Source of the DNA: Lepidodermella squamata
Taxonomy: Eukaryota > Animalia > Gastrotricha
Assembly: GCA_047495785.1 (NCBI GenBank)
Contig: JBLDXI010000025.1
Coordinates: 310,001 to 374,000, forward strand
Length of the DNA stretch: 64,000 bases
Direction: 5' to 3'
Of the stretch, positions 805-32,698 are shown one piece after another. The notes below the pieces were generated by a model. It saw only the letters and a list, made by a program, of their open reading frames with translations, did not search any database and had not been told where the DNA came from. The stretch's first letter is position 1. Each line of letters starts with the position of its first letter. The position numbers and the translations under genes were made by a program.

Positions 805-1423
805 TATCGTGTTTTCGAATGAGTGATTTTTGACCTTTTGAAGTGTTTTCGAGGCGGTTGAGATAAGAACTGTCGTACGTAGGTGTCAACTGGGCACCTC
901 GATGTCACCTTCAATTACAGGTGAAATGGGATGTTTCCACTACCCAGGTCTCTGAGGCCACCTCCGCATAGCAAGCGCATAGCTGTTGGGCGATTCATTT
1001 TACGGAGAAAAATTAGCAACGAAACGAGGCTTGAAAACATAATTAGGAAAATAGATTGAAAAATCATGGAAACATTCCCATGAATATTCAGATGACACGA
1101 GCTGCTTGCGTGAATAAGATTGCAAAAAGGCTCCGTCAGGAGAAAGCGTTTGTAAAATTACTCTGGTTTCCGCGCAAACGAACAAATCTTTCGCCTTTTA
1201 CTAAAGATTTCCGTGCGTGGGAACATTCAATGAGCCTTCGGGCGATTTCTTGGGCTTCTCTCTCAACGAGAAGCGATAATGCAAGCATACAAAGACTCGC
1301 GAGGCGCCAACGTTCACAGCAATGATGCACGCCTTTTCAACTCAACGCCAAGATTGCCTTTCATTTGCGACGCAGTTAATGCCAAGGTGAAATACTCTTT
1401 CCCGCAGTGCCGTCACGTGAAGC

Positions 1424-1496
1424 GGTTCGGTGGTGTAGTGGTTATCACATCTGCCTAACACGCAGAAGGTCGCCGGTTCAATCCCGGCCCGAATCA
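1424..1496 (+). tRNA. tRNA-Val(AAC)
   Basis: Acceptor stem GGTTCGG/CCGAATC, anticodon arm TCTGC-CTAACAC-GCAGA, T loop GTTCAATC. Confidence 0.95.
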
Positions 1497-1594
1497 GCTA
1501 TAAGTTTTTTTGGCTTTGCAATAAAGACTGGCTTCGATGTCAATTGTTCTAAAAAATTGAACCGCCTGCCACTGTCTCGAGTTCTGTGTGACTC

Positions 1595-1666
1595 TGCCAC
1601 GGCCTGGAGTCGAACCAGGGTCACCTCGGCCACAACGAGGAATACTAACCACTATACTACCGTGGC
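1595..1666 (-). tRNA. tRNA-His(GTG)
   Basis: Reverse complement GCCACGGTAGTATAGTGGTTAGTATTCCTCGTTGTGGCCGAGGTGACCCTGGTTCGACTCCAGGCCGTGGCA forms a full cloverleaf. Confidence 0.95.
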
Positions 1667-1765
1667 TGATTTCGCGGTTAAGCACACAATTTGACAGCGG
1701 CCTATCAACGTCTATCTGGTCTTGTTAAAATTCAGGCAGCGCCGACAGATGGCTTACCTGGAGAA

Positions 1766-1847
1766 GACGCGGTGGCCGAGTGGTTAAGGCGATGGACTGC
1801 TAATCCATTGGGCTCTGCCCGCGAGGGTTCGAATCCCTTCTGCGTCG
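1766..1847 (+). tRNA. tRNA-Ser(GCT)
   Basis: GACGCGG...ATGGA-CTGCTAA-TCCAT, long variable arm, GGTTCGAATCC. Confidence 0.95.
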
Positions 1848-1934
1848 TGATAAATTTTGCCTCGTTCAAAGCTGAGACGCTAGTTTTTCTGGCTTTGATG
1901 ATGACAAAAATTATGTATTTTTTAAAAATGAATG

Positions 1935-2006
1935 CTCCTTGGCAGGGAATCGAACCCTGGTCTCCCGCGTGACAGGCGGGGATACTAACCACTATACTAC
2001 CAAGGA
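1935..2006 (-). tRNA. tRNA-Asp(GTC)
   Basis: Reverse complement TCCTTGG...CCCGC-CTGTCAC-GCGGG...GGTTCGATTCC...CCAAGGAG. Confidence 0.95.
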
Positions 2007-2096
2007 TTGCACGAATGTTGATGGTCTTCGAATAGCTTCTCACCCACTTCCACGCCAACAGAAGGCCATTCCGTCAAAAATGTGACTTGGCGCAGT

Positions 2097-2167
2097 TGCA
2101 TCGGCCGGGAATCGAACCCGGGCCTCCCGCGTGGCAGGCGAGAATTCTACCACTGAACCACCGATGC
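2097..2167 (-). tRNA. tRNA-Gly(GCC)
   Basis: Reverse complement GCATCGGTGGTTCAGTGGTAGAATTCTCGCCTGCCACGCGGGAGGCCCGGGTTCGATTCCCGGCCGATGCA, canonical metazoan tRNA-Gly. Confidence 0.97.
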
Positions 2168-2252
2168 GCTGCTTGATGCCTAGCTCATGGGCGTCGTGTC
2201 GATGCGTTCACATCGTCATAATGGCAAATGCGGGCGAACGCCAAAAACTAAG

Positions 2253-2334
2253 CGTCGCCAGTAGGATTCGAACCTACGCGCGGAAACCGCATCTGATTTC
2301 GAGTCAGACCCCTTAACCACTCGGGCATAGCGAC
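2253..2334 (-). tRNA. tRNA-Ser(CGA)
   Basis: Reverse complement GTCGCTA...TCTGA-CTCGAAA-TCAGA, long variable arm, GGTTCGAATCC. Confidence 0.93.
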
Positions 2335-2875: not shown

Positions 2876-5462
2876 ATGATATTCGCACGAAGAATCATTA
2901 TCTTAACTCTTTCTACAACTCTCGAGGCGAAGTTGCCGTGGAACACCCCTATACCATCGCGAATCACGTCCACATCTTACAACGCGAGCGACTCCAGCCG
3001 AGCAACAGTCGGTTTGCTGCTCTCGTGCAATTATGCCGGCACTAATCAACCGCAAGGCCCGATATGCTCCGAGGGAATTCGCTACGCCCTTGACAGCATA
3101 AAACGACAGCCCAACCTCCTGCGTGGAATCGAACTTGTCATTGATCCAATCGAAGATTTGGTGAGTTAACTCCTGAGCATTAAACTAAATCTCTCTAATT
3201 CTAATACTTCAAAGTGCAACGAGGCCACGGCTACTATGAGATTCTTCACTGAGATGCGGAGGAATGACGAAGTTCTCAATCGATTTCCTCTCGTTCTGTA
3301 CCCAACATGTTCAGCTCACTACACCGTGGCACAAACTTTACAACATCAAAACTTCATGAGTGTAAGAAAACCGAATCTTAGATTTGAGGGTAATTTGAAT
3401 ATCTTGATGTTCAGTTAGCTCATTGGAGCATCTCAAATGAAGTATTCACGCAGAGGACTATTTTCCGAAATTTTTTCGTGGTTTCGCCACAGTTAACGAT
3501 TACTGCCGAAGCTCTGACTTCATTCATGGCAGTTGTGGGATGGAAAAAGGTGTCCCTTGTCTCAGATATGAAAGATTCATTATACGCCAGCGATATATAC
3601 ATGCAAAGAATGCTGGAGCAGAAGTTAAACATCACCTCGTCCGCTCGTTACAAAATTCCATTGCTGAATGGGCCTCTGCCAGATTCTGAGAGCATCCGCG
3701 CCGTAGTTGAGGAAATGAAGCGCAACGACCCGAGAATCATTAGTATGGCAAGTGCTTCCCCCGTTCGAGTTGCATGCTGGCTTCATCGTTACAAACTATA
3801 TGGGCCGAACTACGTCATCTTCGTGTCTATGCAGACCCCTTTCTTACCAAATGACCCATTGAGGTTTCCATGGTGCACCGAGGTGATGTTGAGAGATGTC
3901 GCGGAATCAGTCATCCAGCACGGGAATACAAACACGATGGCCCTGGGTCGGGAAAATCTAGTTGATTCTTTCGGGAATTCAGGCTCCGATTTAGACTCGA
4001 TGCTTTTGTCCAGTATAGATAGTCCCCAGACGAGAAACAGCTGGGCTATCCGCCAGTACACCTACGACAGCGTGCTTTTAGCGGCCCACGTGCTGAACGC
4101 TACACAGACATTCCTCAGACAGAAAAATCAGTCGTTGATCGACTGGGTGACTTCTGGGACAAAATTTGCGTCGAACGGAAGCTATATCGTCGAAGTAATG
4201 AAAGAAGCACTCTATTCGACTCGCGTTACAACTAAGACAGGGGAAATCGCCTTTGAGCGTAGCACGACTCTGAACTCGGGCGGGAATGTAATTTTCGGAT
4301 ACTTCAAACTTCAATTATTGCCCAACAGCTCGAGCCCAATAGCGATCCCGTTTGCGACATTTGACACTAAACTCAAAAAGATCGATTTGATTCCAGGAAA
4401 ATTAAAGTGGCAAACTCTTGGTGGCAATGCTCCACCTGATTCAGTCAGAATCGTGAAAATCATCCTTCCTCTGATTTCAACTGAAGGTTACGTTACAATA
4501 ACAATCCTGTCATGTTTTGGGACTGTAGCGGTTATACTGGCCGGCTTCTACCTGCTGAGACGTCGCCAATCGCCGCGGGTCTTGAATTCCTTGCCAAAGC
4601 TGAATTCTTTCATTTTACTAGGCGATCTACTGCTTCTATGCTCTAATTTGGTACAGCTACCTTGGTATCAAGAAGGCTTTACTGAACTCTGCATGGCATC
4701 TAATGGTCTTTTGTTTTTTGGGATCTTTTTCTTGGTCGCAGCTATGGTGGGTAAGTTCGAGATAGCCAAGCTGCTGAGCTTGGCAGCTCGCCCTAAAAGA
4801 AGCGTGCTCAGAATGCTGAGCGCATTATACTTGGGTCGTAGCACTTCAACGGCCTCTCGGAGTACCAGTGCGAATCTAACTCCTACAACGAGGAAACTTC
4901 TGCCACCTACCAAAATTAATGTTAAATTTATTTCAAAGCTTACTTTTTTTCTGGTCGCTATCACGGGTGCTCTTGTCTTTTTGATTGCTCTTTTACCGAT
5001 TTGGTTTTCCATTGAGCCCTATGAGCTAACAACAATCCTGCGGCCATCTCAACTATCAAATATTGATGACTCAATCGCATATCAAGAGGTTGTTTTCGAA
5101 TGCTCTATAAGCGATTCATACCTAACCAAATCTGTTATTGGCGTTTTTGGTGCGATTTTAATGATACTAGTCCTCCGAGGGGCACTTGCTGCTTATGCAG
5201 TTCGATCGGTATGCTTGAACGATTGATCTTGTTTCTACTTGAAAAATGCCTTTCTCTTATACAGAAAACGTTCGAGCAAATTAACGACTTGAAGTCAGTA
5301 GTTAAATGCTTCTATGGGACAATCTTGCTGCTTGCTGCTGGTGCTGTGATTGGGGCGGTTATTTTCACAGAGCAAGAAAAGCAACGCATAGCTCTGTCAG
5401 CGATGAATCTAGCATGTGTATCTCTTAATTTAGGGCTAATTTTCATTCCCCGGTCCCGGTGA
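2876..5462 (+). CDS. Class C GPCR, GABA-B-receptor-like (Venus flytrap + 7TM), clade A copy 1, about 807 aa, intact
   Basis: Exons 2876-3160, 3215-3361, 3415-5208, 5265-5462, all phase 0 GT-AG. Signal peptide, ALDSIK..PNLL.G.EL, C-S motif, YTYD, KW...APPDS linker with no Cys-rich domain, 7 hydrophobic helices, IND.K in ICL3, FIP at the end of TM7. Confidence 0.9.
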
Positions 5463-5916: not shown

Positions 5917-5990
5917 TGGCCACTAGGAGGATCGAACTCACGACCTTCGCGTTATTAGCACGACGCTCTAACCAACTGAGCTAAGCGGCC
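5917..5990 (-). tRNA. tRNA-Ile(AAT)
   Basis: Reverse complement GGCCGCTTAGCTCAGTTGGTTAGAGCGTCGTGCTAATAACGCGAAGGTCGTGAGTTCGATCCTCCTAGTGGCCA; T stem has a mismatch. Confidence 0.88.
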
Positions 5991-6078
5991 AGTTGAACTT
6001 GTACGTCGAAACCTTCAACTTATTGCCGGTGAGCAGGGTCTGATCGTCGCCGAGAAGTGAAAAATGATAATCACAATC

Positions 6079-6158
6079 AGGCTCAGGGGGGGATCGAACC
6101 CTCGATCTTCTGCTTACTAGGCAGACGCTCTACCACTAAGCCACTAAGCTACTGAGCC
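6079..6158 (-). tRNA. tRNA-Thr(AGT) with an 8-nt tandem duplication in the D arm (possible pseudo-tRNA)
   Basis: Reverse complement GGCTCAGTA-GCTTAGTG-GCTTAGTG-GTAGAGCG-TCTGC-CTAGTAA-GCAGA...GAGGGTTCGATCCCCCC-CTGAGCCT (80 nt). Confidence 0.85.
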
Positions 6159-6236
6159 GACATGACGTTAAAATCGCGTTACGCTAAGCTCTACCGGCGC
6201 GACTTTTCAGGTGTTGCGAGAAATTCGCAAAAAGAA

Positions 6237-6309
6237 TGGAGGATACGGGCGTCGATCCCGTTACCTCTCGCATGCTAAGCGAGCGCTCTACCATTTGAGC
6301 TAATCCCCC
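6237..6309 (-). tRNA. tRNA-Ala(AGC)
   Basis: Reverse complement GGGGGATTAGCTCAAATGGTAGAGCGCTCGCTTAGCATGCGAGAGGTAACGGGATCGACGCCCGTATCCTCCA, with G3:U70. Confidence 0.95.
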
Positions 6310-6388
6310 GTTGTTGATGCTACGCCATTCTGTATACTCTTTGACAGCGTCTCACACTGTGCAGTTGTGTCTTGAATGCTAAAACAGA

Positions 6389-6461
6389 TGACCCCGACGT
6401 GACTTGAACACGCAACCTTCTGATCTGGAGTCAGACGCTCTGCCAATTGAGCTACGGAGTC
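6389..6461 (-). tRNA. tRNA-Trp(CCA)
   Basis: Reverse complement GACTCCG...TCTGA-CTCCAGA-TCAGA...GCGTGTTCAAGTCACGT-CGGGGTCA. Confidence 0.95.
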
Positions 6462-9679: not shown

Positions 9680-12600
9680 ATGCTGAAATTCCTGATAAAA
9701 TCGTGCCTAGTACTATCCGCGTTGCTGTGCACGGTCGAAGCGGCCGGGTTGTGCCTGAAGCGGCCGGGCGAAGAAACGGTGACGTGGAACTACGACGCGC
9801 GGTCGGGCCGGTGTTACGCCGCCATCGAGTTCGCGACATCGTCCAATTTCAGCGACGCGAGGCGCGCGTGCTCCGGCTACAACGCCACGCTAGCAACCGT
9901 GCCGAACCTAGCAACGAACGTGTTCCTCATCAGCCCGCTGTTCCTGCCCAACCGGCGCAGTCCCAAGCTGCTCATGATCGGGCTGCGGTTTTCGAACGGC
10001 GAGGGCCGCTGGGACGACAACACGTACTACAGTCTCGATAGGTTCCAGTCGTTCTCAAACGCAACCCTGCAGCAGTCGAATAGGAACATCCCCGTCGAGC
10101 GGCTGATCGACGATTTGTGTACTATTATAATTTTCGACCAGACCACGCAGTCAGCGGCTGAGAACGGCAAATGGGGCCGGGTGGGGTGCTCGATGCCGCT
10201 GCCGAAGCCCGTCGCCATGTGCGCCCGCCTCGCCGACGAGAGCGACGTGTGTCCGCCGGGCACGCGCGTCGCCCGCATCGGCACGACGCGCCGCATCCGC
10301 TGCGAGTTGTGCCCGCTGAACACGTACCAGTCCAGCTTCAACCAGGACACGTGCAAAGACTGCCCTGGGCCGGCTATGCAGGGCTTCTTCATCGACACGC
10401 AACAGCCCGGCGCCACGTCGCAAATGCAGTGCTATCGGCCGGTAAATTTTATTTTTATCCATTACATAAATTTCTGGAAAATTTCAAATCAAGTTTTTTA
10501 AAAACAAATGCCGGAATTTTGGACAATTCGGCATTATAATTTCTGGAAAATCTGAACATTTTTATTTTATTTTAATTATATTCTATTTTTGGAATTTTTC
10601 ACAAAAAACCGTAGTTCGGGGTAATTGTGGACAAATCAAATTTGTAGGTGATTAGCTTTGAAAGGTCGAATGATAGAATTTATATAAAATTCCCCGTCTT
10701 TTCAGCTTTCGATTTGCAGCAATTCTGGATTTTTTTAAATATTATAACCAGTGCATGTGAGATCCCCGCACATCTTCCTATTACATTTTGGGACGCAATT
10801 TGACATGGGCGTTTCCATAGCGTTGCTCTCTCAGTTAGTGAAAGAAAAATGAAGATCCGACTTTGCAGGGCATTCGCCTCTTTCAGATGAAAATCGGGGA
10901 AAGTAAATTGGGACGCTGCGCTTCAATTTATTTGTTCTCAATGTTTTTCGAAACGAAGTTGATGCTCCATCGCGTATTCGTAATTTTTTCCAATTGAGAC
11001 TCAGGGGTTGAAATATAAGCTGAAATGTCGCTATGCCTTTCGGTATGCAAATGAGCATCGAAAAATGTTTTAAATGGCAAAAAATATCAGGTCAAATGTC
11101 CATATCGCAATGTCCTTTTGTCTTTTGCATTTTCATGTTGTTCACAATCAATTTGACTAGCGATGTTTGTCACGTGCCCAGTTTTTCTTCCTATTAACTT
11201 GTTTACTTTTTCATAGGTACGCAGCGTCTTCTTGATTTTTTTTCATTTTTTGCCTACTCATTCGCTGCTACAAAAACAGCAGAAGAAAGTGAATGGGCAT
11301 ACAAAACGTGGCTGACATCTGACATCACTGGTGAAATTGGTTTTAGACAAAAAATGCAAGATACAAAAGGTGTACAAATTGGGAATGACTTGACAAAATG
11401 TGTCTCAAATATCATAAATTTCTGAATTTAGACGGATCCTCGACCTTAGAATATTAGAAATACAAAATGCTACAAAATTTAAAATAATTTTCGCTTATTT
11501 TATTCTAGAATTTACATGGATTGTCTCAAATAAGCGTAAAATTGTATGTAAATTGGCTTTGTAAATTTCAAAAAGCCTGGAAATATAAATGAGATGAGGA
11601 ATTCTGCGAGTTTTGAAATTCAGAAATTTTCACCGTGGACTTGGAAAATCAGAATACCTTTCACCGGAAACAAATTTACGGTTAGCAGAACCTAATTTGC
11701 TGTAGCGCAACCAAATACTCGAAATATGTCAAAAGTGTCACTTTTCGAATAATTGAAGCAAAGCATGACATCAGAATTGAACACTACATATTTCACAGCA
11801 TTTTACGCATAATTCATTTAGAAATGTCCAAAAATTGATTTTAGGCCTATAAAAATTCGAAAATTAGGTTTCGATAAAAGGAGGACCCTTGGAAACTGTA
11901 GACTGCTCGGAAACAAATACCTGGCTAATTTTGAAACTAGGTTTGGCCCAATAAGGAAAAGAGTAAAATTTCAACTTGCAGACTCCAATTTTGAAAAACT
12001 AGGAATACCTATGTAATTTTTTTATTAATTTGTGTGTTAGCTTCCGAGTTTGATCGATTTCAACCCGAAGTACGGCATCTACGCGGGTGGGACGGTGATC
12101 CGCATCGAGGGCCACAACTTCTTCGTCGGCAACGACTTCCTGGTGCTGTTCAACAACCAGCCGGGCGAGCTGCTCGACTACTCGCCGAATTCGCTCATCA
12201 TCAAGGCGCCGCCGCTCAACTTCAGCGACCCGAACGTCGTCGCGCAGCCGAACTCGACGGACATCGTCGCGACGTTCCAGCTGCTGTTCAACAACGACAT
12301 CTTCATTGTCGAGTACTTCACGTACAAGGCAAACCCGGTCGTGTACGGCTACTCGCAGGGCGCGTTCATCGCCGGCGGCGGCCAGAACATCACGGTTTTC
12401 GGCGAAAATCTCGACGCTGCTCACGACATCACGCTTCTCGTCGAGGTGAGTCTCACTCTTCTTCTATATTGACTCTTGGAGACAGTCCAGGCTAAAAGAA
12501 CAGATTAATCAGAAAAGGAGTTGGCTAACATTTCGAAAATTCAAGAAAAAATTCGGAAGAATCGGACTCAGTTAAATGCCTAAACATTTGCTGAATTCAG

Positions 12601-15600
12601 GCTCCAGCAATTAAATTAGGATTCATCGTACTAAATTGTCTCGATTCTCGTTCTTCATCGATACTATTTTATCTTAGCTACCCGGTACCATCAGGTGTTT
12701 CAAATGTTGGATTCCAAGCCGCGGTTGATATCGGAAAAAATCACTGATTTGTAAAATCGATACTTGCAATTGATATCGGTTTCGCAGGCTAAATTATAAC
12801 TCTTAATTAAACTGACCACCTATAGCGTTTCAGGGCTTCAAATTGAGTGTTGGAACTTTGAATTCAGGGTGTCCACACACCCTTAACTATACCGAGAGTA
12901 CCAGAATGAATTTGTAATGAATATGAATGAAGTGGAAAATTCTCGAACACTCATGAGGAAAGAGACGAAACCATTCATGTTGAATAAAATAATCGGCGCT
13001 TCTAAAATAATGGTTTTCCCCTCAGAAATTAATAAAAAAGGGTTTCTATTTCTAACCTTAATTTTCCGGGATTTTTTGTTGGCGGTACCAACGTGTCATA
13101 GCCGAATAAAATTAGGGCAGATGGCTATAATAAGCGGGTTCCAGGTTCCAGGGTGATAAATGAGGCACGATCTCCAATTTTAATCACCTGAGGGTCTTGG
13201 AAAAATCATTAATTGCCAATCAGCTTTAAAATTTTTCAACAGAAATGAAAAAAATATGGGAAATACCGAAAATTTCCGAACCAGTGACCGTTGGATTTTT
13301 TCGCATTTTTCGTAGATGGGGAGAATTCGGAAATATTTAAAAAAAATCAATTTTCAGCAAGTCGAAAAGTAATTTAAAAGCTTTGCTTTTTTGTCGCTGC
13401 TTTTAGGTTTCGAACATGACTTCAGACTACGACACGTCAGAAACGGACCCGATGAGCACGACGGTGGACCCAGGCGGCGGCAGCAGCAGCAACGGCGACG
13501 AGACAGCGGTGGAATTCGCCGCCGCCTCGCCGCCGGCCGCCCCCGTCCAAAAAGTCATGATCCGCGCGTCGTGCTCGCCCATCAACAGCTCGACCATGGT
13601 GTGCCAGATGCCGGACCTGTACTCGCTGCTGCCCGGGCTGACGCGGCGCCAGGTAAGCGGCGCCAACCAGCTGCCAGCGGCCGGCGGCGGCACCACCGAC
13701 CCGCCCGGGCAAGGCAAATACCCGTTCGGACCGGGCGGGCGGAACCCGGTGCTGCCGCAACCGCGCGGCGGCGGCATCTCCGCCATCGACCCGGTCAACA
13801 ACGTGCTGAAGCGGCAGCGGGGCGGCGGGGCCGCGGCGGAGCGGTCGCGCGACTCGTGTGCGCCCGCCCTGGGCGGCGGTGGCGGCGCGGGGGGCGACGA
13901 CAGTCCGTGGCGCACGTCGTTTTCGTTCGCCTTCGACCAGTCGTACCAGACGAAGCCGGAGTCGCCGGGCAGCGGCGATGTCGTCATTTACGATGACCCA
14001 GTTTTCGACAAGTGGCCGGCCGAGAAAATTCTGCCGCCCGAGTCGGAGGGCGCCGGCACCCAGCTAGGTATGTTTGCGCTTTGATACAAATATTTGTGAT
14101 TGAAATATTTGAAAAAAAAATTAAATTACTCGGTGCAAAATTTACTCGGAAAATGTAAATTTATTGAAGTGTAGATGAGAACAAAATCCGCACTCATTTT
14201 CTAAGGCTTAAAAGAAAATCTTGCCCTTGTATCGAGGTTGGGTCTCGAGCTCTGGAATATTATATTTTTTCGAGTTTCACGTCTATTTTTGAATTTTTAT
14301 CGTTTCTTACCGATCAGTCTCATGATTTGCAGCATCGGCCTGAGCTCACTTCAATTTCAGGTCGATTTCGATTAAAACAGCAAAAGGAAAATTGCATATC
14401 CTATGGCTCTAAACATGAAGCCAGCTAAAACATGAAGAATCCCTGGATCATTAGCCTACTCCAAAAAAACGTTTCGACAATTTTCGAAGAACGTTGAAAG
14501 CGATCATATTAATTCGGTTATTCTAGGCTTTTGCCCAGTTTACGCTTTAAACGTGAAATTATTGGAAACATTTCTGCATCTTTTCATTCTAACGATTTCT
14601 AATTTTGTTGTATTTCTCTTATGTCGCAGCGATCGAAGGCCGCGGGCTGTTGTGCGGCGTGACGGAGGCGGACTACCGCGTGACACTCGGCCAGCAGGCG
14701 TGCCCCATCGCCGCCGTCAACATGACGACGCTGCTGTGCACGCCGCCGCTGCTGGGCGCCGGCGTGCGGTCGGCGCAGCATGCGGCCGTGTACGTGCGCG
14801 TCGGCTCCAAGGCGCCGTTCAACGTCGGCAAGGTCCTGCTCACCATCGAAAAAACAACCACGGCCGCGACTACGCCATCGACTCCACAGGTGAGTATAGT
14901 GCATAAGTCTCAGAATTACGGCGCAAATAATACGTAAACAGCCGAGAATATGTCCAGGAAAAAATCTGTCTCAGCGTGACGGGGTTCTGTTAAAAAAGCG
15001 CACGTCCCCGCCTTTATAGGCCAAATCCATGCGACACCAAATTGTACTGCAGAATAGTCACGAAAGCCCTCCACAGGGAGAAGGAACGAAATAACGCATA
15101 AAATCATTAAAAATCATAAAAGATTCATGAGATCACTACCTCTTAACAGTAATAATTGGTAATATAAGCATGTCAGCAGAGCCGTTTAGCGCAACAGTTT
15201 TTCAGAAATATATTTTTGAGTACCTGACGGCGAGCCGTGGTTTCACTTTAAAAACAAACGTATGCCGTATAGAAAGAATTCGATCTCGCTATAATTTATG
15301 CGTACTTATATTTCGTAAAAACATAAAACGAGAAACGAGAATTCCTTTGCATAAGTTTCTTTAGGAACAATCTAGTATCTAGTTTTTAAAGTGAACTGCC
15401 TTGTTTTCAGCTAACCCAAAGCTATAAAAGCTATGAAATCTAAAGTTCAGGACTTTTTTTTAAATATCAACTTGCGCGTCACGTGTTGCATTCAAGCGTT
15501 CAGAGAAATTCACAAATTTCATTATTTCAAGATGATTTTAAAGCTTTTCGGTTATTTTGGCATTTCTATTTTCCTTTCTACTTTAACACTTGAATGCTCT

Positions 15601-18600
15601 AGTTCAAGAAAATCGAACATTTGTAACTCTTGAAATCAAGCTTCAGTCTTCAGTACAAAGCCAAATTCGATTTCGATTCAGGGCTTACAACTTTTTTCAA
15701 TCTCCCTGCTATGCGGATCAAATATGTAGTCGGTGGATTTTAATTTCAATTTTTCCGAATTTTTGAATTTCGAAAATTAACACTGAACTGGTCGAGCCTA
15801 ATCGGTTCAAACTGAGAATGCATTTTATGCACACTTTAATATCCTATTTTTGCTTCGTTGCAGACGGTTGAGACGACGACGCCGAAAGCGACTGCGAAAA
15901 CGTCGCGGACAACGCGATCGACGACGGTGCGCACGACAACGACCGCGCCGGCGACACCTGCGACGGTGCCGGCGATGACGCGGATGACGCGGCCGGTGCG
16001 GCCGACGGACAGCCCGCTGAACAGCACGCAGCCGGCCTCGAACACGACGACTTCGACCATCCAGGTAAGCAACTGCTGCGAGATTATCCCCACTCACTAT
16101 GCCAAATAGCATCCCTGGAGTGAAGTCACAGTGCACTGTAAATTATGTATATATTAGGTATTTGATGAGGTGGAGGCGGAGGCGGCGAGTGGGGAGACGT
16201 TAGACCCAGATGACCTTTTCATCAACCCGGTCAAGCTTAACGAAATGATTTGCCAGCTCGAACTCGAAACCAATCCTAATAAAACTGATAGCGCAGCGAC
16301 ACCCAGTGATTACGCATAATAGAAGCCGAATATTATATTTTTCACCAAATTTTATTACTTACTCTGACTTAATAACTACTGTAATTCTCTCTCTACTGCT
16401 GGTGAATCATTTCGAATCAATAAAAACCGGTTCTTACAATTTCATGCGTCCTTTCATTTTATTTTTATCACCGATATTGGGAATCGATAATCGATATAAA
16501 AATCGAAATATTCTTTTTAATTATTTCATATTTAAATATTTTTGAATTTTGAAATAATTTGAGTTTTTTTTAAATTTCACTTTTTCGCAACTTAATTCCT
16601 GGAAATTTTCAGACAACTGCCCGAACCACGCCGCTGATCATCCCGCTGGTTACGCAGCCGACCCCGCCAGCCGCCACAACGCCGCCGCTGTCAAACGTTA
16701 CAAACCAAAACTTCGGCGTCAATCAGTTCCCTGATACCGCCAACAACCGGCAATACCTGCTGATCGGTGTTGCAGTTGGCGTCGGCATCGCCGTGCTCCT
16801 CATTGTGGCGACTATTGTCACGGTTTGCTTAGTGCTGAGGCGCCGCGAGGCTCTTGCGAAGGCTGGCCTAAGTTCCCGCCCGACGGCTCCAGCAGCCGTG
16901 GCCACATCATCAACCCTACCAGCTCAGGTAAGGTCGAAATTAAATTTTGGTAACTCCCTCGAAACTTTGACTCAGGCTTCAAATATCTGAAAATCGCCAC
17001 ATTAAAGATTGCCCCATGTCCCATTTAGCCTGTAAGCCAGAATATTTTACTTTGCTGCTTTGATTGCTCTGTATAGGTCCTGATGGCACCTGCCCCACCT
17101 GTGATTCAGCAAGCTCAAACTGCCCCGCCAATCGGTTTCGCTGCAGCCAACATGCGGCGCAGCTTGGTGCCACGGCAGAGCGAACGCGGGTCGATTTACA
17201 ACGAAGGCCTCAGCCAACACGGCTCGATGGAGGTCCACGAAGGCCTGATTACTTTAAACGTACACGCAGATCCAACAGCGGCTCATCATCCTGAGGCGGA
17301 TGCGTTCACGTTTGAAGCCCGGCAAATCATCGAGGAATTGCCAGAGTCTATTCAGGTGAATATCTCCAGTCCGAAATGATTCACGCGTGTCTCAAAAATT
17401 GGTCTTGTGCATATGCAAATGAGGCTGTGAATATGCTAATTTTGACGAGGCTGCATATTTTTACTCAATTAGCATGTAGCCGTGGAATATGATAATTAGG
17501 TCGAGGGCAGCTAAACTTTTCCAACTCATTTGCATATGCACACTTTTTCCTTAAAAAGCTCATTTGCATATTCACCAATTATTGCTGATTCTGCAAAATG
17601 AGCACTTGTTGTTCGAATAATGAAAATTGCAGCGCCTAATCAGCACGTTATTCATGCACATTTTAGCAAATGCTAATTATTCATAGATTTGAATTATGAA
17701 TATTCCGTTGTTTTTCAGTTTTGAGATGTTTTTATTCAATTTAACCCCGTTATGCACTTGCAAATTACAGCAGCTCATTTTTAATGCCCAACGTTTTTCA
17801 GGTGAAGTTGGCTCCGTTATTGGTGCCATTGGGTCGCATCAAAGTGGCGCAGACGTTCTTGCGCGGCCATTTCGGTGAGCTTGCACTCGGCTACTGGGCG
17901 CCCTCGCTGGACCGCGCGTCCGAAGATCCTCAGCCGGTACTCGTCAAATCGCTCAATCGCTTCATGCAACGCAGTACCGTGGTGAGGAAATTCCTAGAGG
18001 ACGCTTTGCTACTGGCGCGGTGCAATGAAAACGTGAATTGCCTAGCGCCAGTGGGTGTTGCATTCCGCCGAGCCCGGCCACTAGTCCTATACCCACATGT
18101 TGATGGTGTCAATCTTAAAATCTATCTCAACGATGAAAATGTAAGTTGAACTTTCAGAACTGGTTCATTAATGAAAGAGGGTTTCATCATAGGAGTCGAT
18201 TCTCGTACGGCACATGGTCGACCTAGCGTCCCAAGTTGCCTCAGCTATGGTCTACCTGAGTGAGACGAGAAACATCGTGCATAAAGATATAGCTGCTCGA
18301 AATTGCATGTAAGTATCAGGCGTAAATGAATCTTAAATCATGACTTTTGTTGATTGTTCTCAGATTGTCCCCAGATAACAATTATCTGCTCAAGGTGACA
18401 GATAACGCCCTGGTTTCGGACATGCACGGTCTCGACTACGAATTCGTGGACGAAGCTCACGAATTCCTGCCCGTTCGCTGGGCGGCTCCCGAAACCCTCC
18501 TCCGCCTTGAATACTCAGTCAAAACTGATGTCGTAAGTCATTAACAAACTGCTAATATATAAAAGAGCGAATTGATTTTGAGTATCATGAAGCTTTGAAA

Positions 18601-19307
18601 TATCTAAGGAAATTATCGAATTTGATCAAGATAATAATTTGATTTTTTTTCTTTTAGTGGTCATTCGGTGTGTTGGTATGGGAGATTTTCACCCGCGGCT
18701 CTAAGCCGTTCGCAGACATTCACAGCGTCGACGTGGTCGCTGAACTGCGCGAGCGGTTACAGCACCTGCTTCAGCGCGATTCCGGCGGCGAGGAGCAGCC
18801 ACCTGTGCTTGGCAAGCCGCAAGCGATGCCGGCTGAAATCTACGACGTTGTCAATGCGTAAGTTGAATAAGCTATCACGTATCCCATCATGCTCAGCACA
18901 CGTCCCAACTGAGACGAATTGACGATGAAATTATTCCCATGGACTTTTCCCATTCGTATGAATTAGCCTAAGCTGCGCCAGGCAGAGGTCCTCATCGCGA
19001 TGCTCTAGAGGTTCAGGATTCCCCGAATTAGTTGTATCTGGGTTCAATCTCAGTCACTAGTACAAGCCATTTTCAGCCTGATTCAAGAATGAAAAAACCT
19101 TGGAAATTGACCACGCTTAGCTCTCCAATCCGAACCCGAATGGTCAATATTGCGAAAAATCCCTGTTTTTACAGATGCTGCCAGGCGCGGCCTCGGGCGA
19201 GACCTAATTTCGGGTGGCTTAACGACCGGCTGACGTCGCTGCTAGACGAAAACGAAACAAGGCCGGAGTACAACAGGGCTGTGCTTGCGCCAGATGCAAC
19301 GCGGTAG
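9680..19307 (+). CDS. Single-pass receptor tyrosine pseudokinase (RYK-type kinase domain) with C-type lectin, ephrin-receptor-like Cys repeat, about 3 IPT/TIG domains and a Thr-rich stalk; about 1279 aa
   Basis: 12 phase-compatible GT-AG exons: 9680-10441, 12041-12445, 13407-14067, 14630-14889, 15864-16064, 16613-16927, 17077-17355, 17802-18140, 18193-18308, 18364-18532, 18658-18857, 19175-19307 (3840 nt, no stops). CTLD: RCY..FS.AR..C...ATLA..IGL..W..C. Cys repeat: CELCPLNTYQSSFNQDTCKDCP. IPT: P..G...GGT.IRIEG.NF. TM: LLIGVAVGVGIAVLLIVATIVTVCLVL-RRR. Kinase: RGHFG, VLVK, HKDIAARNC, DNAL, PVRWAAPE, DVWSFGV. Confidence 0.88.
11114..11370. repeat. Degenerate inverted repeat (MITE-like) in intron 1 of the receptor gene
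   Basis: ccttttgt..ttgcatttt..caatttgactagcgatgt..tgccca..ttcttc is mirrored by gaagaa..tgggca..acatcactggtgaaattg..aaaatgcaa..acaaaagg. Confidence 0.5.
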
Positions 19308-21502: not shown

Positions 21503-23326
21503 TCAGAGTCCGATGAAATTGGTGACCATGAACAGCGAATTTGCAGGCTGATCGTACGGCACCATGTGCCCGGCATTGCGTACCACGACGAATGTCAGCT
21601 GGCCAACAGTTGTCGAATAGCCAATCGCCTCTTGTTTGCTGTCGGTCCAAATGCGGCGAGGCGCTTGCTGCCACTCGTCCTTGTGCGGCCAGTTGAGCGA
21701 GCGCAGGAAGTTGTCCGTGCCAACAGTTGGCACGATGAGGTCGAGATGGCCGCTGTAGTACAGGACAGGGATCGAGGATTCGGTGAGCAGGTATTCGACT
21801 CGGTCTTTCACGGTGTTCATCACGTCCAGCATGAGGTTCTTCTCGACTGTCGAAGATTGCGAGCCGTATGGCTGCGAGCCGACGTGAATGTTGCGACGAG
21901 TCGAGTTCAGCTGCAGGTAGCTTGCGTAGTAATCAAAGTCAGGCGGGGATTGCTGCAAGTTAGAAAATCACAACAAAGAGGGTAACCGGTGAATTAGTGG
22001 AAATCGAGCGTGATACCTTGCAGAGAAGGAAGTTGAAGTAGTCAGTGCAGCCAGATGCGTTTTGGAAGTAGCTTGGGTATGGGAAAAAGTCGCCGTTGAT
22101 GAGCATGTCGAAGATGTCGAAAGCCGGGCCGAACTGCTTCTGTTGGATGAACGTCACTGCCTTCTGTGTCTGATCGTTGAAATACTGTCGCTGCGGATCG
22201 CTGAGCAGGCCCAGGCTGAACAGGTGATCGCCAGACGGTGCTAGCATCTTTAAAAGTTGTAGAAGAAATGAGGGTTAGGAATGTGCCTATTCCTATTCCT
22301 ATTCCTATTATTCGTATTCATATTCCTATTCCTAGCTAATATTCCTAGCTTACAGTCTCAGGATCGGACAGGCCATTTCCGACAAGGATGCCGCCCAATT
22401 TCGCAACTGGCGACGGCTTGTTGACTGACTCGTAAAACCGCTCCATCTGAACGAGCTTCTGGCCGAAAGCCGGCACGTACTTGCCGGCGTACGACTCACC
22501 GGCGACGAAAAACGGCTGGCTGGCTAGTTCGGGGAACATGGTGTAGAACTGTACGAAGAAGGTGTACAAATGCGTGGCTACGGTGTCTTCGTCTTTCACG
22601 TAGCCGTTGGGGTCAGTGACGAACGAAAACCCGGTGCCAACTGGGTTGTCGATGAAGATCATGTTGTAGAAGTTGGTCCACGAAGCCGGGCGGCGGGAGA
22701 CTGTCATCGAAGCATCGACCTGGAGGAATAAAAACTCTTAAAATAAAAAAGAGCTTTTTTTATTTATTTTGCCACCAATTATGGATTTATCAAGCCCATT
22801 TTTCAATTGGAAATCCGATTTCTATATTTTTCAAAGAATACAATTTTCTTCCTTCATCTCCCCTGATTCTGGTAGGGGAGGATAGTGGTAAGTAACCTTA
22901 AACGTGACCCAGGCATCAAAGGTTCCTTACTTGGAAAGGTCCATTTTCCACGAAAAGTCCGAATAGAGAAGAAGCACCTGGGCCGCCTTGAAGCCACAAA
23001 ACCAGCGGAGCATCCCCGCCGTTCCGGTTCGTTGGCGTGTACCAGAAAAACATATTCGCTCCGGTTTTATTGTCCACCGTGATGTAGCCAGAATAGCTGA
23101 GTTGCCCAGGAATTAACGGTTCGTTTTTAGAAAATTGCTGGGCCAAGTCGATTTGGCCTGTTAGGATGAGAGGTGTCAGGAATAACGGCTGGCCTGGGTC
23201 AGCTTTTGCAGATGGAGCTTCGGCTGCTGACCACTCGTCCATAGCTACGTCGACCCGCCGCGGTTTAGCTTCGATCGAAGCCACGAAAATCGATACGGCG
23301 ATCAGTAAACAAGTCGAGATTTTCAT
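21503..23326 (-). CDS. Serine carboxypeptidase, family S10 (CPVL/vitellogenic carboxypeptidase-like)
   Basis: Exons 23326-22931, 22719-22354, 22247-22017, 21952-21503. Signal peptide, WLQGGPGASS, IDNPVGTGFS, catalytic GESYAG, DLIVP and AGHMVP. Confidence 0.95.
22287..22335. repeat. (CTATTC)n intronic microsatellite
   Basis: Tandem cctattcctatt units. Confidence 0.85.
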
Positions 23327-30940: not shown

Positions 30941-32698
30941 ATGCTAAAGGGGGTTCTCTCCGTTGCCTCCTTCTTCCTCAGTTATGTCGATAGCCGCCAG
31001 TGCGGCAATCCGCCCGTCGTTTCCTGTGGCATCTGCTCAACCAAGCCATGGACCGATTGCAGAGCTATGTCGTACATTGTCAATGACCTTCATCTCTACG
31101 AACCAAATACTGTTCTCTATTACAAGCCGATCAACTCCAGCTGGGTTTTCACGGGTCCGACTCAGGTCACATGCCAGGCCAACGGCACCTGGACCCACGG
31201 CCCAACTTGTGAGATGATCTGCTCGCCCCCAACGGTGCCTTTCGGTTCATGCACTGGCGCGACATTGGGCGGGAAGTACTTCAGAGTTAGAGACCAAGCA
31301 AACTGCACGTGCCAGACCGGCTACATTCGCTCAACCGGGGTTCTAAACCCGACTTGTGATGAGGGGAATATCTGGCTGAACCCGCCGACCTGCGAACCTA
31401 TCGCCACTATCAGTGTCCTATTCCCGGGCTGTGCGAAATTGCCTTCAGTCGCATTCGGTGCCTGCTCAGCAATAAACATAACGATCCCAGCACGCATCGC
31501 TTTCAATGAGGAAGTTTCTTGCACGTGCAACTCCGGATACTACGTAGCTTCAACTTCAAGGGCGAGATGCATCGGACATGACAAGTATTAGCTTTTCACT
31601 CATGAAGGAGGAGCCTTTCACTTGCCAAATGTTTTCAGATTTACCAACGTTCCAACCTGCGAACCCATAGACCTGCCACCAGCTTTAATTTGCCCAAGAC
31701 CAACGGCTGTTCCTAACGCTAGCTGTGGTGGTAGCGATTGCAGCGGTGGCAACGACGACGAAGCAATCTTTGAAATCGGACAAGCTGTTACATTCACAGT
31801 AAGCTGACGAGTAGAAGTTATTCGCTTATTTTCATCTTAATGGTTCCCAGTGTAATACAGGCTACCGAATGTCTGGCAATGCCATGATTAAATGCCTGGA
31901 AAATGGTAACTGGACGAAATCTCCAACCTGCGTCAGGATCGCCGACACCGCCGGTTGTGGCAAAGCTCCCAAGTTTCCTGGAGGCGTCTGCCACGCCGAA
32001 GAAGACGACGACGATGATGATGTTGACATCGGACGGACGGTATTTAAAAAGCCATTAGAAGCTTGCAGAAAATATTGAATCTGTACCCAACGTCTAAGGT
32101 TTCGTGCTCCTGCATCGATGAGGATTTCTATCGGCTCGAGGGAAATCGGTTTCTCACATGTCAAACTAACAGGACATTTGCCGGTGTAATGCCAAAATGC
32201 GTGACCCATATGATGCCTCTTTGCTCTCTTTCTGCTGTGGACACTCCGGCCAATGGCTACTGCATTTCAGCACTCAATGATGGAGCTGCCGCCCTTGCTG
32301 TCGGAGAGAAAGCTATTTGCGGCTGCGACAGAGGTTATTACCTAAATAATGGGCGAAACGGTGCAACTGTCACCCTGACCTGCAAGGGCTGGGACAGGTG
32401 GGATGGCAGCAGGCCATCGTGCACTCTCATCTGGCCCACCGCGAGGCCTATCTGCGCTTTCCCGAGTGAAATCCCCGGGGGATATTGCGAGGTTGATGGT
32501 CGTGAAAACGAAGATGGCTTCGTCAATGTAGGCGAGTCTTTCACGTGCGCTTGCGATGCTGGCAAGAAATTCCCAACGGCCGTTACCGGCAAGGTCAAAT
32601 GCATTGCCATGAACACTTACGATGTAACTTTGCCGACATGCGACCAGCAAACTACTACGCAGCAAACAACACTTTTCTTTGGTTTTCCTCGAGGGTGA
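30941..32698 (+). CDS. Secreted multi-sushi (CCP/SCR) domain protein
   Basis: Exons 30941-31584, 31639-31798, 31851-32039, 32069-32698. Signal peptide and about 7 repeats of C..PP.VP.G.C...C.C..GY......C....W...PTC; no TM. Confidence 0.85.

What the first reader, a model, noticed from the sequence alone, without database searches (positions are those of the whole stretch)
9680..19307. RYK-type receptor pseudokinase with a lectin/plexin-like ectodomain in place of the WIF domain
Seen: 12 exons splice in phase into one ORF of about 1279 aa: signal peptide, C-type lectin domain, ephrin-receptor-like Cys repeat, about 3 IPT/TIG domains, Thr/Pro stalk, TM, kinase. The kinase has the RYK/Derailed set of deviations: first Gly of GxGxxG lost (LRGHFG), VLVK for VAVK, HKD for HRD, DNAL for DFG. 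Established: RYK/Derailed/LIN-18 bind Wnt through a single WIF domain, and IPT arrays belong to Met/plexins, which carry a Sema domain. I recognise neither WIF nor Sema here. Inference: a domain-shuffled receptor coupling lectin-type recognition to a catalytically impaired RYK-like scaffold; I do not know this architecture from any described family.
Basis: partly seen in the sequence, partly recalled or inferred. Interest (0 to 1): 0.88.

Follow-up and report, generated by a model that had tools for sequence, protein, structure and literature searches.

The report
Lectin/IPT receptor with RYK-like dead kinase
This is a real 12-exon animal gene for a cell-surface receptor with a C-type-lectin-like domain, a cysteine-rich repeat, three IPT domains and a probably inactive kinase that carries RYK's odd active-site residues; it belongs to a small unnamed receptor lineage lying between the Met and RYK families, not to RYK proper.

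Summary
Twelve GT-AG exons (9680-19307, + strand) splice in phase into 1279 aa: signal peptide, C-type-lectin-like domain, Ephrin_rec_like repeat, about three IPT/TIG domains, Thr/Pro stalk, TM helix, and a kinase with LRGHFG, VLVK, HKD and DNAL.

RNA contigs confirm the last four junctions. A homologue on a metagenome contig (L001) encodes everything from the Cys repeat to the kinase end in one uninterrupted ORF. Its lectin exon is joined in frame by a 73-nt intron, so this is one gene.

The "RYK-type" reading is only partly supported.
- There is no WIF domain and no RYK C-terminal Y-[IV] tail.
- Two RYK-specific length differences in the kinase are absent.
- The kinase scores higher against Met/Ron than against RYK.

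In trees the kinase lies outside the WIF-RYK clade. It groups robustly with mollusc IPT-bearing pseudokinases (DAA/DAS). That clade is sister to RYK only while the motif columns are kept; without them it moves to the Met side.

An annelid (Owenia) protein has the same Cys-repeat/IPT layout with an active, Met-like kinase. The best reading is therefore an unnamed IPT-array receptor pseudokinase lineage of the Met/RYK supergroup, probably a non-catalytic co-receptor. The lectin domain lacks the sugar-binding motifs.

The parts
9680..10441 (+). Exon 1 (aa 1-254): signal peptide (9680-9745), long-form C-type-lectin-like domain with 6 Cys (about 9746-10222), Ephrin_rec_like Cys-rich repeat (about 10241-10435)
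   Evidence: One continuous ORF. Pfam Lectin_C 27.6 bits and Ephrin_rec_like 31.1 bits, both above cutoff. The weak exhaustive-search hits are genuine Lectin_C and Ephrin_rec_like proteins. Donor ccg|GTAAAT.
12041..12445 (+). Exon 2 (aa 255-389): IPT/TIG 1 and the start of IPT 2
   Evidence: Pfam TIG 44.5 bits, 2 stretches. The alignment to P0002 is seamless across the exon 1/2 junction (QMQCYRP|LPSLIDFNP against QMQCHRPLPMLKSIDP).
13407..14067 (+). Exon 3 (aa 390-610, phase 1 end): rest of IPT 2 with a Gly/Pro-rich insert of about 100 aa, and the start of IPT 3
   Evidence: Open frame with GT-AG borders. The flanks of the insert align with P0002 IPT 2/3. There is no Pfam hit on this exon alone.
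14630..14889 (+). Exon 4 (aa 610-696): IPT/TIG 3 and the start of the Thr-rich stalk
   Evidence: Pfam TIG 23.9 bits; aligned to P0002 aa 333-418.
15864..16064 (+). Exon 5 (aa 697-763): Thr/Pro-rich mucin-like stalk
   Evidence: In-phase exon. Stalk composition is 33% Thr and 15% Pro.
16158..16440 (+). Candidate alternative terminal exon 5b. Joined in frame to exon 5, it adds 53 aa, then stop TAA at 16317-16319, with AATAAA at 16419-16424. It would give a secreted, TM-less ectodomain isoform.
   Evidence: An RNA contig shows the joint 16064->16158 (GT..AG, depth 7.2, but only 28 nt on the shorter side) and RNA cover over 16156-16394. Sequence read. Tentative.
16613..16927 (+). Exon 6 (aa 764-868): end of the stalk, TM helix (about 16754-16837, followed by RRRE), start of the juxtamembrane region. 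An alternative acceptor lies at 16658.
   Evidence: Hydropathy peak at aa 809-841. The open frame 16574-16987 has no ATG, so the exon needs an upstream exon. Collinear with the P0002 TM region.
17077..17355 (+). Exon 7 (aa 869-961): juxtamembrane region. An alternative acceptor lies at 17110.
   Evidence: The conserved block GLSQHGSMEVHEG against GLSEHGTMVIENG, and alignment continuous across the exon 7/8 junction.
17802..18140 (+). Exon 8 (aa 962-1074): kinase N-lobe. Degenerate Gly loop LRGHFG (17859-17876), beta3 Lys in VLVK (K1010, 17946-17948), alphaC Glu retained.
   Evidence: Pfam PK_Tyr 27.7 bits. Donor 18140|GT confirmed by an RNA contig.
18193..18308 (+). Exon 9 (aa 1075-1113): alphaE and the catalytic loop, HKDIAARN (HKD at 18280-18288)
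   Evidence: Sequence. Both flanking introns (52 and 55 nt) confirmed by RNA contigs.
18364..18532 (+). Exon 10 (aa 1113-1169): DNAL in place of DFG-L (18401-18412), activation loop, APE
   Evidence: Pfam PK_Tyr 28.9 bits; junctions confirmed.
18658..18857 (+). Exon 11 (aa 1170-1236): kinase C-lobe (DVWSFGVLVWE...)
   Evidence: Pfam PK_Tyr 32.8 bits; junctions 18532/18658 and 18857/19175 confirmed.
19175..19307 (+). Exon 12 (aa 1236-1279 plus stop): end of the kinase (RPNF) and a short tail with a conserved Tyr (EYNRAV). The tail has no PDZ-type Y-[IV] end.
   Evidence: the junction is confirmed by an RNA contig.

Best explanation
The locus is one gene for a type I membrane receptor of about 1279 aa. 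It belongs to a small, so far unnamed lineage of IPT-array receptors in the Met/RYK kinase supergroup.

The conserved core of the lineage is about three membrane-proximal IPT domains, one TM helix and the kinase. The N-terminal cap varies between members:
- here, a C-type-lectin-like domain plus one ephrin-receptor-like Cys repeat;
- in the snail Batillaria, a LamG-like region plus laminin-EGF repeats.

The kinase has degenerated in this lineage. DFG has become DNA here and DAA or DAS in molluscs, HRD has become HKD, and the first glycine of the Gly loop is lost. The beta3 Lys, alphaC Glu, catalytic Asp and Asn are kept.

Inferred mechanism: like RYK, the protein has little or no phosphotransfer activity. 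It would work as a ligand-binding co-receptor or scaffold whose cytoplasmic part, including a conserved tail tyrosine, is used by an active partner kinase. The lectin-like domain lacks the Ca/sugar motifs, so it more likely binds protein or another non-sugar ligand. A soluble ectodomain isoform from alternative exon 5b is possible.

The resemblance to RYK in the active-site residues is either convergent or marks a deep sister relationship. The gene is not a member of the RYK family proper.
For: Single gene:
- The lectin domain and the Cys repeat lie in one exon here.
- In homologue L001, everything from the Cys repeat to the kinase end is one 3867-nt ORF. Its lectin exon is spliced in frame by a 73-nt GT-AG intron.
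- Exon 6 has no start codon.
- Four kinase junctions are seen in RNA contigs.

The lineage:
- In all four trees the window gene and P0002 pair at 100/99. In the three trees that include them, the pair joins the mollusc pseudokinases (Mercenaria, Batillaria, Elysia) at 96/86 to 100/97.
- Batillaria P0285 has TIG domains, a TM helix and a kinase with HRD/DAA.
- Mercenaria P0209 starts inside the last IPT domain.

Met-side affinities:
- PDB ranking is RON 168.9 > MET 163.7 > MER 155.8 > AXL 151.7 > RYK 148.5 bits.
- The window's own kinase scores 137-142 bits against Met-like sequences and 117 against the best RYK.
- The ectodomain's best non-self matches in the fetched set are Owenia and Met-family IPT arrays.
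- Owenia has Ephrin_rec_like repeats, TIG domains and an active Met-like kinase.
- Kinase indel lengths are Met-like.

Pseudokinase reading: the motifs are the same as in RYK, whose ATP site is reported as occluded (PMC13259870, Table 2 and text).

Sugar motifs: absence read directly from the sequence (VER in place of EPN, WGR in place of WND).
Against: With all alignment columns, the clade is sister to WIF-RYK (97/93). Forcing it into the Met-like set is rejected (AU p=0.0097) and forcing it next to Owenia is marginally rejected (p=0.044). This also holds with the molluscs left out (96/89). A genuine RYK-side origin is therefore a live alternative.

The tree lacks TAM kinases and deuterostome RYKs, and the window branch is long (1.12).

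Loss of catalysis is inferred from motifs only: the catalytic Asp, Asn, the beta3 Lys and the DFG Asp are all present.

No RNA evidence links exons 1-7. In the one RNA run, exons 3-4 had zero depth while the kinase exons had 16-22.

The source organism and the family's taxonomic range are unknown.
Confidence: 0.6

Rival explanations
1. The lineage is a true offshoot of the RYK stem. The HKD/DNA pseudokinase arose once, in a common ancestor of this clade and WIF-RYK. Either this clade kept an older IPT ectodomain or it swapped WIF for a lectin/IPT module.
For: The all-column tree gives a sister relationship at 97/93, and 96/89 without the molluscs. AU tests reject the Met-side placements. The strings HKDLATRN and VKVADNAL are identical between P0002 and insect Dnt. 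The first Gly of the loop is lost, as in RYK (PMC13259870).
Against: Support falls to 87/71 when 3 motif columns are dropped. The placement flips to the Met side (93/79) when 19 columns are dropped, and then neither topology is rejected (p=0.37). The mollusc members carry DAA/DAS and partly HRD, so DNA need not be ancestral to the clade. The RYK alphaD-alphaE insert, activation-loop deletion, LGDNENRP signature, WIF domain and Y-[IV] tail are all absent. Diagnostic columns split 6 Met to 4 RYK. Pseudokinases tend to attract each other as long branches.
Confidence: 0.3
2. There are two genes rather than one: a secreted lectin/IPT protein ending at exon 5b, and a separate downstream TM-kinase or kinase-only transcript. 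In that case the 1279-aa fusion would be an artefact of in-phase exon joining.
For: An RNA contig joins exon 5 to exon 5b, which carries a stop and an AATAAA signal. RNA depth is 0 on exons 3-4, about 1 on exons 6-7 and 16-22 on exons 8-12. No RNA joint was seen for 5/6, 6/7 or 7/8. Exon 7 contains an in-frame ATG at 17083.
Against: Exon 6, which holds the TM helix, has no start codon or signal peptide and has a good acceptor. The homologue has ectodomain, TM and kinase in one uninterrupted ORF, and so does Batillaria P0285. The RNA run is small, held only as assembled contigs, comes from a differently coded organism and is only 95-99% alike for many contigs, so gaps in cover prove nothing. 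The 5/5b joint has only 28 nt on its shorter side.
Confidence: 0.07
3. The kinase is still catalytically active, as an atypical but working tyrosine kinase, and the receptor signals by ligand-induced autophosphorylation like Met.
For: The beta3 Lys, alphaC Glu, catalytic Asp and Asn, the DFG Asp, APE and an activation-loop Tyr are retained. Its closest sequence relatives by score are active Met-like kinases.
Against: It carries the same HKD plus DNA combination as RYK, listed as a pseudokinase with an occluded ATP site (PMC13259870). The DFG Phe and Gly are lost in all five members of the clade. The kinase branches are long, consistent with relaxed or changed constraint.
Confidence: 0.15

Closest known systems
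RYK / Derailed / Doughnut / LIN-18 family (WIF domain, TM helix, pseudokinase)
   Same: Type I receptor with a kinase carrying HKD, DNA(L) and a Gly loop lacking its first Gly. The catalytic-loop and DNAL strings of the homologue P0002 are identical to insect Dnt. It is the sister group in the all-column tree.
   Different: There is no WIF domain, and the ectodomain is about 800 aa rather than about 200. There is no C-terminal Y-[IV] tail. The RYK alphaD-alphaE insert and activation-loop deletion are absent. The gene lies outside the RYK clade (100/99), and the sister relationship depends on the motif columns.
Met / Ron receptor tyrosine kinases (Sema, PSI, four IPT domains, TM helix, active kinase)
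   Same: An IPT array sits next to the membrane. These are the highest-scoring solved kinases (RON 168.9, MET 163.7 bits). Indel lengths and the activation-loop (K/R)EY pattern are Met-like. The IPT modules match each other.
   Different: There is no Sema or PSI domain, and there are three rather than four IPT domains. The motifs are those of a pseudokinase. No YxN docking pair is present in the tail. Placement inside the Met-like set is rejected with all columns. The published Met survey searched by Sema domain and would not have found such proteins (PMC6374515).
Owenia fusiformis 'receptor protein-tyrosine kinase' CAH1793778.1 / CAH1793776.1 (P0055, P0290; unnamed)
   Same: Signal peptide, Ephrin_rec_like repeats, IPT array, TM helix and a Met/RYK-supergroup kinase. 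It is the best named ectodomain match to P0002.
   Different: The kinase is active-type (GKGQFG, VAVK, HRD, DFG), there is no lectin domain, and it has two or three Cys repeats. Its kinase sits in the Met-like clade, not with the window gene. AU for joining them gives p=0.044.
Mollusc IPT pseudokinases: Batillaria attramentaria KAK7484905.1 (P0285), Mercenaria XP_053406725/6 'TXK-like', Elysia GFR69325.1 'HGFR, partial'
   Same: These are the robust kinase sister group (96/86 to 100/97). They share IPT domains before the TM helix, loss of the DFG Phe and Gly, and partly HKD.
   Different: In Batillaria the N-terminal cap is a LamG-like region plus laminin-EGF repeats instead of a lectin domain plus ephrin-like repeat. 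Their motif is DAA/DAS rather than DNA. They have YxN tail motifs, which the window gene lacks.
[quoted passage not shown] 2000, as cited in PMC2680970)
   Same: C-type-lectin-like domains sit in the ectodomain of a receptor tyrosine-kinase-type protein.
   Different: The comparison rests on the literature only and its sequence was not compared here. It has four lectin domains, and the citing paper's description mentions no IPT array or RYK-like motifs.

Membership tests
RYK/Derailed family | Single extracellular WIF domain (PF02019) | tested here: not met
   Pfam on all ectodomain exons and on P0002 gives Lectin_C, Ephrin_rec_like and TIG but no WIF. The true RYKs retrieved all carry PF02019.
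RYK/Derailed family | Pseudokinase motif set: first Gly of GxGxxG lost, HKD, DNA | tested here: met
   LRGHFG, HKDIAARN and KVTDNAL. The reference set comes from PMC13259870 Table 2. HKD alone is also found in PTK7, ROR1/2 and STYK1.
RYK/Derailed family | Kinase domain nests within the RYK clade | tested here: not met
   The RYK clade (17 sequences, 100/99) excludes it. At best it is a sister, at 97/93 with all columns, 87/71 with 3 columns dropped, and on the Met side with 19 dropped.
RYK/Derailed family | C-terminal PDZ-type tail ending in Y-[IV], and the RYK-specific kinase indels | tested here: not met
   The five arthropod RYK tails printed end in YI or YV. The window gene ends in PDATR and P0002 in PTTGT. 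The alphaD-alphaE insert and the activation-loop deletion are absent.
Met/Ron family | N-terminal Sema domain followed by a PSI domain | tested here: not met
   No Sema or PSI hit appears on any exon or on P0002. Branchiostoma and mollusc Met-likes do show Sema.
Met/Ron family | Membrane-proximal IPT/TIG array | tested here: met
   TIG hits in exons 2 and 4, three TIG stretches in P0002, and matches to Met-family IPT arrays.
Met/Ron family | Catalytically competent kinase (HRD, DFG) that nests in the Met clade | tested here: not met
   The motifs are HKD and DNA. Holding it with Met-like kinases is rejected with all columns (AU p=0.0097), although it becomes their sister when the motif columns are dropped.
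C-type lectin (Ca-dependent carbohydrate-binding) domains | CTLD fold signature (Pfam Lectin_C, conserved Cys pattern, WIGL-like motif) | tested here: met
   Lectin_C scores 27.6 bits against a cutoff of 22.6, covering profile positions 2-72 of 107. Six Cys in the long-form pattern and the motif MIGL were read from the sequence. Exhaustive-search hits 3-26 include genuine Lectin_C proteins. A fold check failed because the AlphaFold model had pLDDT 37.6.
C-type lectin (Ca-dependent carbohydrate-binding) domains | EPN or QPD triplet and WND motif of Ca site 2 | tested here: not met
   The sequence reads ...PVERLIDDLC...GKWGRVGC..., with no EPN/QPD and with WGR in place of WND. P0001 also lacks them.
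Unnamed IPT-array pseudokinase clade (window gene, P0002, Batillaria, Mercenaria, Elysia) | IPT array, TM helix and a kinase with the DFG Phe and Gly lost, forming one kinase clade | tested here: met
   The clade is supported at 96/86, 100/97 and 99/90 in three analyses. Architectures come, and motifs.

The most novel reading that the evidence does not exclude
The clade could be a surviving intermediate between Met-type and RYK-type receptors. An IPT-bearing receptor of the Met/plexin kind would have acquired the HKD/DNA pseudokinase state before the RYK lineage replaced its ectodomain with a WIF domain. RYK would then descend from an IPT receptor, and this gene would preserve the ancestral ectodomain together with the derived kinase.
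Probability: 0.2. Interest if true: 0.7.

Novelty: new variant of a known kind. Interest (0 to 1): 0.5.

Why it matters
Receptor pseudokinases (RYK, ROR, PTK7) are a small and poorly understood set, and all of the pseudokinase-only subfamilies known so far are Wnt co-receptors. This gene shows the RYK combination of active-site changes on a receptor with a completely different, Met-like ectodomain. Relatives occur in molluscs and in one unidentified animal.

That gives a natural test of two questions. Did the HKD/DNA state arise once or repeatedly? Does it serve a general scaffold role that is independent of Wnt/WIF?

It also extends the IPT-receptor repertoire beyond the Sema-based surveys of Met and plexin evolution, which would have missed Sema-less members. 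The practical consequence is modest: a new unnamed invertebrate receptor family to annotate, and a caution against naming it RYK, Met, TXK or HGFR by best hit.

Tried and rejected
- AlphaFold2 of exon 1 without an alignment gave pLDDT 37.6. The model was unusable, so no fold search was run.
- ESM Atlas searches were uninformative. The ectodomain returned generic TIG clusters below 0.9. The kinase returned all kinases at about 0.98. A neighbouring GPCR gave no taxon.
- The first word-based homologue search with whole P0002 returned only unrelated kinases.
- High summed scores of P0045, P0046 and P0164-P0173 are tandem multi-kinase proteins, not relatives; for example, P0045 has six domains of 58-77 bits.
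- I first read the tail Tyr as a Grb2 YxN site. That was wrong: in the window gene and P0002 the Asn is at +1 (EYNR, AYNV). Only the mollusc members have YxN.
- Exact-sequence look-ups for Mercenaria P0209 and for a neighbouring window ORF found nothing, so neither synteny nor the source organism could be established.
- A search of earlier scan notes for RYK, WIF or IPT in this genome was blank. Whether a canonical WIF-RYK coexists in the genome is unknown.
- A count of diagnostic columns between RYK and Met was indecisive, with only 10 columns, split 6 to 4.
- No missing exon was found in the 1.6-kb first intron, because the alignment to P0002 is continuous there.


Full report
THE GENE MODEL

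The + strand between 9680 and 19307 holds twelve open segments that can be joined by canonical GT-AG introns in a single phase-consistent way. The exons are:
- 9680-10441
- 12041-12445
- 13407-14067
- 14630-14889
- 15864-16064
- 16613-16927
- 17077-17355
- 17802-18140
- 18193-18308
- 18364-18532
- 18658-18857
- 19175-19307

The CDS is 3840 nt, giving 1279 aa plus a stop. Introns range from 52 to 1599 nt. Two acceptors are ambiguous, with alternatives of equal phase: 16613 or 16658 for exon 6, and 17077 or 17110 for exon 7.

DOMAIN CALLS

Pfam was run on each exon separately.
- Exon 1: Lectin_C (27.6 bits, cutoff 22.6) and Ephrin_rec_like (31.1, cutoff 23.1).
- Exon 2: TIG (44.5 bits, two stretches). 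Exon 4: TIG (23.9).
- Exons 8, 10 and 11: PK_Tyr_Ser-Thr.
- No WIF, Sema or PSI anywhere.

The weak hits of an exhaustive search with exon 1 are genuine Lectin_C and Ephrin_rec_like proteins. Hydropathy shows only an N-terminal signal peptide and one TM helix at aa 809-841. The segment between IPT 3 and the TM helix is 33% Thr and 15% Pro.

The kinase reads LRGHFG, VLVK, HKDIAARN and KVTDNAL, with the alphaC Glu, the catalytic Asp and Asn, and APE retained.

The lectin-like domain has the long-form six-Cys pattern. It lacks EPN/QPD, and WND is replaced by WGR. Sugar binding is therefore not supported.

ONE GENE OR TWO?

Three lines of evidence support a single gene.

1. The lectin domain and the Cys repeat share one exon here.

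2. The exhaustive phmmer search of 1.84 billion representative proteins with exon 1 found only two real relatives. P0001 is a 153-aa lectin exon. P0002 is a 1288-aa protein on an ENA metagenome contig. In that contig (L001), the Cys repeat, three TIG domains, stalk, TM helix and HKD/DNAL kinase form one uninterrupted 3867-nt ORF. The lectin exon lies just upstream and is joined in frame by a 73-nt GT-AG intron (...NGRW|SLVECSAK...). The window model and P0002 are collinear from aa 168 to the C-terminus. The alignment runs straight across the exon 1/2 and 7/8 junctions.

3. Exon 6, which carries the TM helix, has no ATG in its open frame.

RNA evidence is partial. One small RNA run, held as contigs and coming from a differently coded organism, confirms the four junctions between exons 8 and 12. 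It gives no cover on exons 3-4 and little on exons 6-7. It also shows a joint from the exon 5 donor to 16158. That alternative exon 5b adds 53 aa, then a stop, with AATAAA 100 nt downstream. It suggests a secreted isoform, but the joint has only 28 nt on one side. I rate a two-gene reading at about 7%.

WHICH KINASE FAMILY?

By score, the kinase is closest to Met/Ron. For P0002 against all solved structures the ranking is RON 168.9, MET 163.7, MER 155.8, AXL 151.7, TYRO3 148.6 and RYK 148.5 bits. The N-lobe alone is a near tie among Mer, Axl, Met and RYK. The window's own kinase scores 137-142 bits against Met-like sequences, 127 against Owenia and 117 against the best RYK.

Two database searches with different length windows supplied sequences for a tree. 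They returned Met/Ron, invertebrate Met-likes, 18 WIF-bearing RYK/Dnt proteins, and Trk, Ror, InsR, ROS, FGFR and Abl.

Tree results (69 kinase domains, IQ-TREE with LG+C20 PMSF):

| Analysis | Placement of the window clade | Support |
|---|---|---|
| All columns | Window + P0002; joined to three mollusc pseudokinases; the five together sister to the RYK clade (itself 100/99), with Met-likes incl. Owenia apart | 100/99; 96/86; 97/93 |
| All columns, AU tests | Joining Owenia disfavoured; nesting among Met-likes rejected | p=0.044; p=0.0097 |
| All columns, molluscs left out | Sister to RYK | 96/89 |
| 3 motif columns dropped (HKD Lys; DNA Asn, Ala) | Sister to RYK | 87/71 |
| 19 columns dropped (Gly loop, HKD, DNA) | Sister to the Met-like clade; RYK alternative not rejected | 93/79; dlnL 0.9, p=0.37 |

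The RYK signal therefore sits largely in the motif columns. Other characters point the same way:
- RYKs share an insert between alphaD and alphaE, a shorter activation loop and an LGDNENRP signature. The window clade has the Met-like lengths and a Met-like (K/R)EY pattern.
- Columns that discriminate RYK from Met split 6 to 4.
- RYK tails end in Y-[IV]. This protein's does not.
- The mollusc members carry DAA or DAS, and one keeps HRD. DNA is therefore not obviously ancestral to the clade.
- HKD also occurs in PTK7, ROR1/2 and STYK1 (PMC13259870, Table 2).

My reading is that this is a distinct lineage within a well-supported Met+RYK supergroup (99-100 support in all runs). It is not a member of RYK, and its side of the Met/RYK split is unresolved.

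THE ECTODOMAIN AND THE RELATIVES

The full-length Batillaria protein (KAK7484905.1, P0285) has a LamG-like region, laminin-EGF repeats, three IPT domains, a TM helix and an HRD/DAA kinase. Mercenaria 'TXK-like' starts inside the last IPT domain.

Owenia fusiformis proteins (CAH1793776-8) have a signal peptide, two or three Ephrin_rec_like repeats, an IPT array, a TM helix and a fully canonical, Met-like kinase. The IPT modules of all of these match each other and those of Met-family receptors.

The recurring core is thus an IPT array, a TM helix and a kinase, with a variable N-terminal cap. Met and Ron can be seen as the Sema/PSI-capped version. The published survey of Met evolution searched by Sema domain and reports no Met in Ecdysozoa (PMC6374515). 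It would not have seen these Sema-less receptors.

An RTK with C-type-lectin-like domains is known from Hydra (Sweet Tooth, cited in PMC2680970). A lectin ectodomain on an RTK is therefore not itself unprecedented.

MECHANISM (INFERRED)

The motif set matches RYK, whose ATP site is described as occluded and which signals non-catalytically (PMC13259870). I therefore expect little or no phosphotransfer, and a role as a ligand-binding co-receptor or scaffold for an active partner kinase. A tail tyrosine is conserved between the window gene and P0002 (EYNRAV, AYNVPI), and the mollusc members have YxN motifs. This fits trans-phosphorylation and adaptor docking. None of it is shown experimentally.

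NOVELTY AND LIMITS

No named family has this architecture. In 1.84 billion representative proteins, the lectin plus Cys-repeat head has one relative.

Relatives of the core do exist in public data under misleading or empty names, and RTK domain shuffling is common in invertebrates. Earlier first-stage notes on this same genome, which I did not check, list several other Met/AXL-like kinases on unusual ectodomains. This gene may therefore be part of a wider radiation. I class it as a new variant of a known kind.

Limits of this analysis:
- The organism is unknown.
- TAM kinases and deuterostome RYKs are absent from the tree.
- The window branch is long.
- There is no RNA support for exons 1-7.
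- The structure prediction of exon 1 failed.

Noticed in passing
window 16158-16440: A possible alternative terminal exon (5b) is used from the exon 5 donor. It is in frame, adds 53 aa, has a stop at 16317 and AATAAA at 16419. RNA contigs cover 16156-16394. It would give a secreted lectin/IPT ectodomain without the TM helix or kinase.
   Followed up: partly
window 1158-2334 and 5917-6461: A U5 spliceosomal snRNA gene (1158-1274, 90.6 bits) lies next to a dense cluster of ten tRNA genes on both strands (Rfam).
   Followed up: no
window 3478-5226 (+), 39926-41449, 43537-45279, 47053-48744, 51611-52945, 57445-59436 (all -): Six paralogous long-exon ORFs form an array. They share motifs such as PLPDSDSIRGAVEEM. 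Two were scanned: 7tm_3 scores 43.6 bits in one and 30.9 bits (below the 33.5 cutoff) in the other, which also has a sub-threshold ANF_receptor hit. This looks like a tandem expansion of class C GPCR-like receptors flanking the gene.
   Followed up: partly
window 21503-23326 (-), 30941-32698 (+), 32952-34112 (-), 37011-38897 (-), 54452-56780 (+): The neighbouring genes are a serine carboxypeptidase S10, a Sushi-repeat protein, a single-exon Cys-loop ligand-gated channel (Neur_chan_LBD), an FG-GAP repeat protein and an M13 peptidase. There is no shared gene order with the homologue's contig L001, which carries zf-C2HC and SSF genes.
   Followed up: partly
L001 5534-9877: In the metagenome homologue the same gene has only one intron (73 nt, inside the lectin domain), against eleven here. 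Its stalk is much longer and rich in Gln, Asn and His. Intron content has changed greatly between the two species.
   Followed up: partly
window 13407-14067 (aa about 395-560): IPT 2 carries an insert of about 100 aa that is Gly/Pro/Ala-rich and absent from P0002. It stays open in frame and may be a disordered loop.
   Followed up: no
proteins P0045, P0046, P0164-P0173 (ENA, EukProt): Proteins with two to six tandem tyrosine-kinase-like domains top the summed-score lists; P0045 has six in 1590 aa. They are not relatives of this gene, but they are an odd multi-kinase architecture, probably from unicellular relatives of animals.
   Followed up: no
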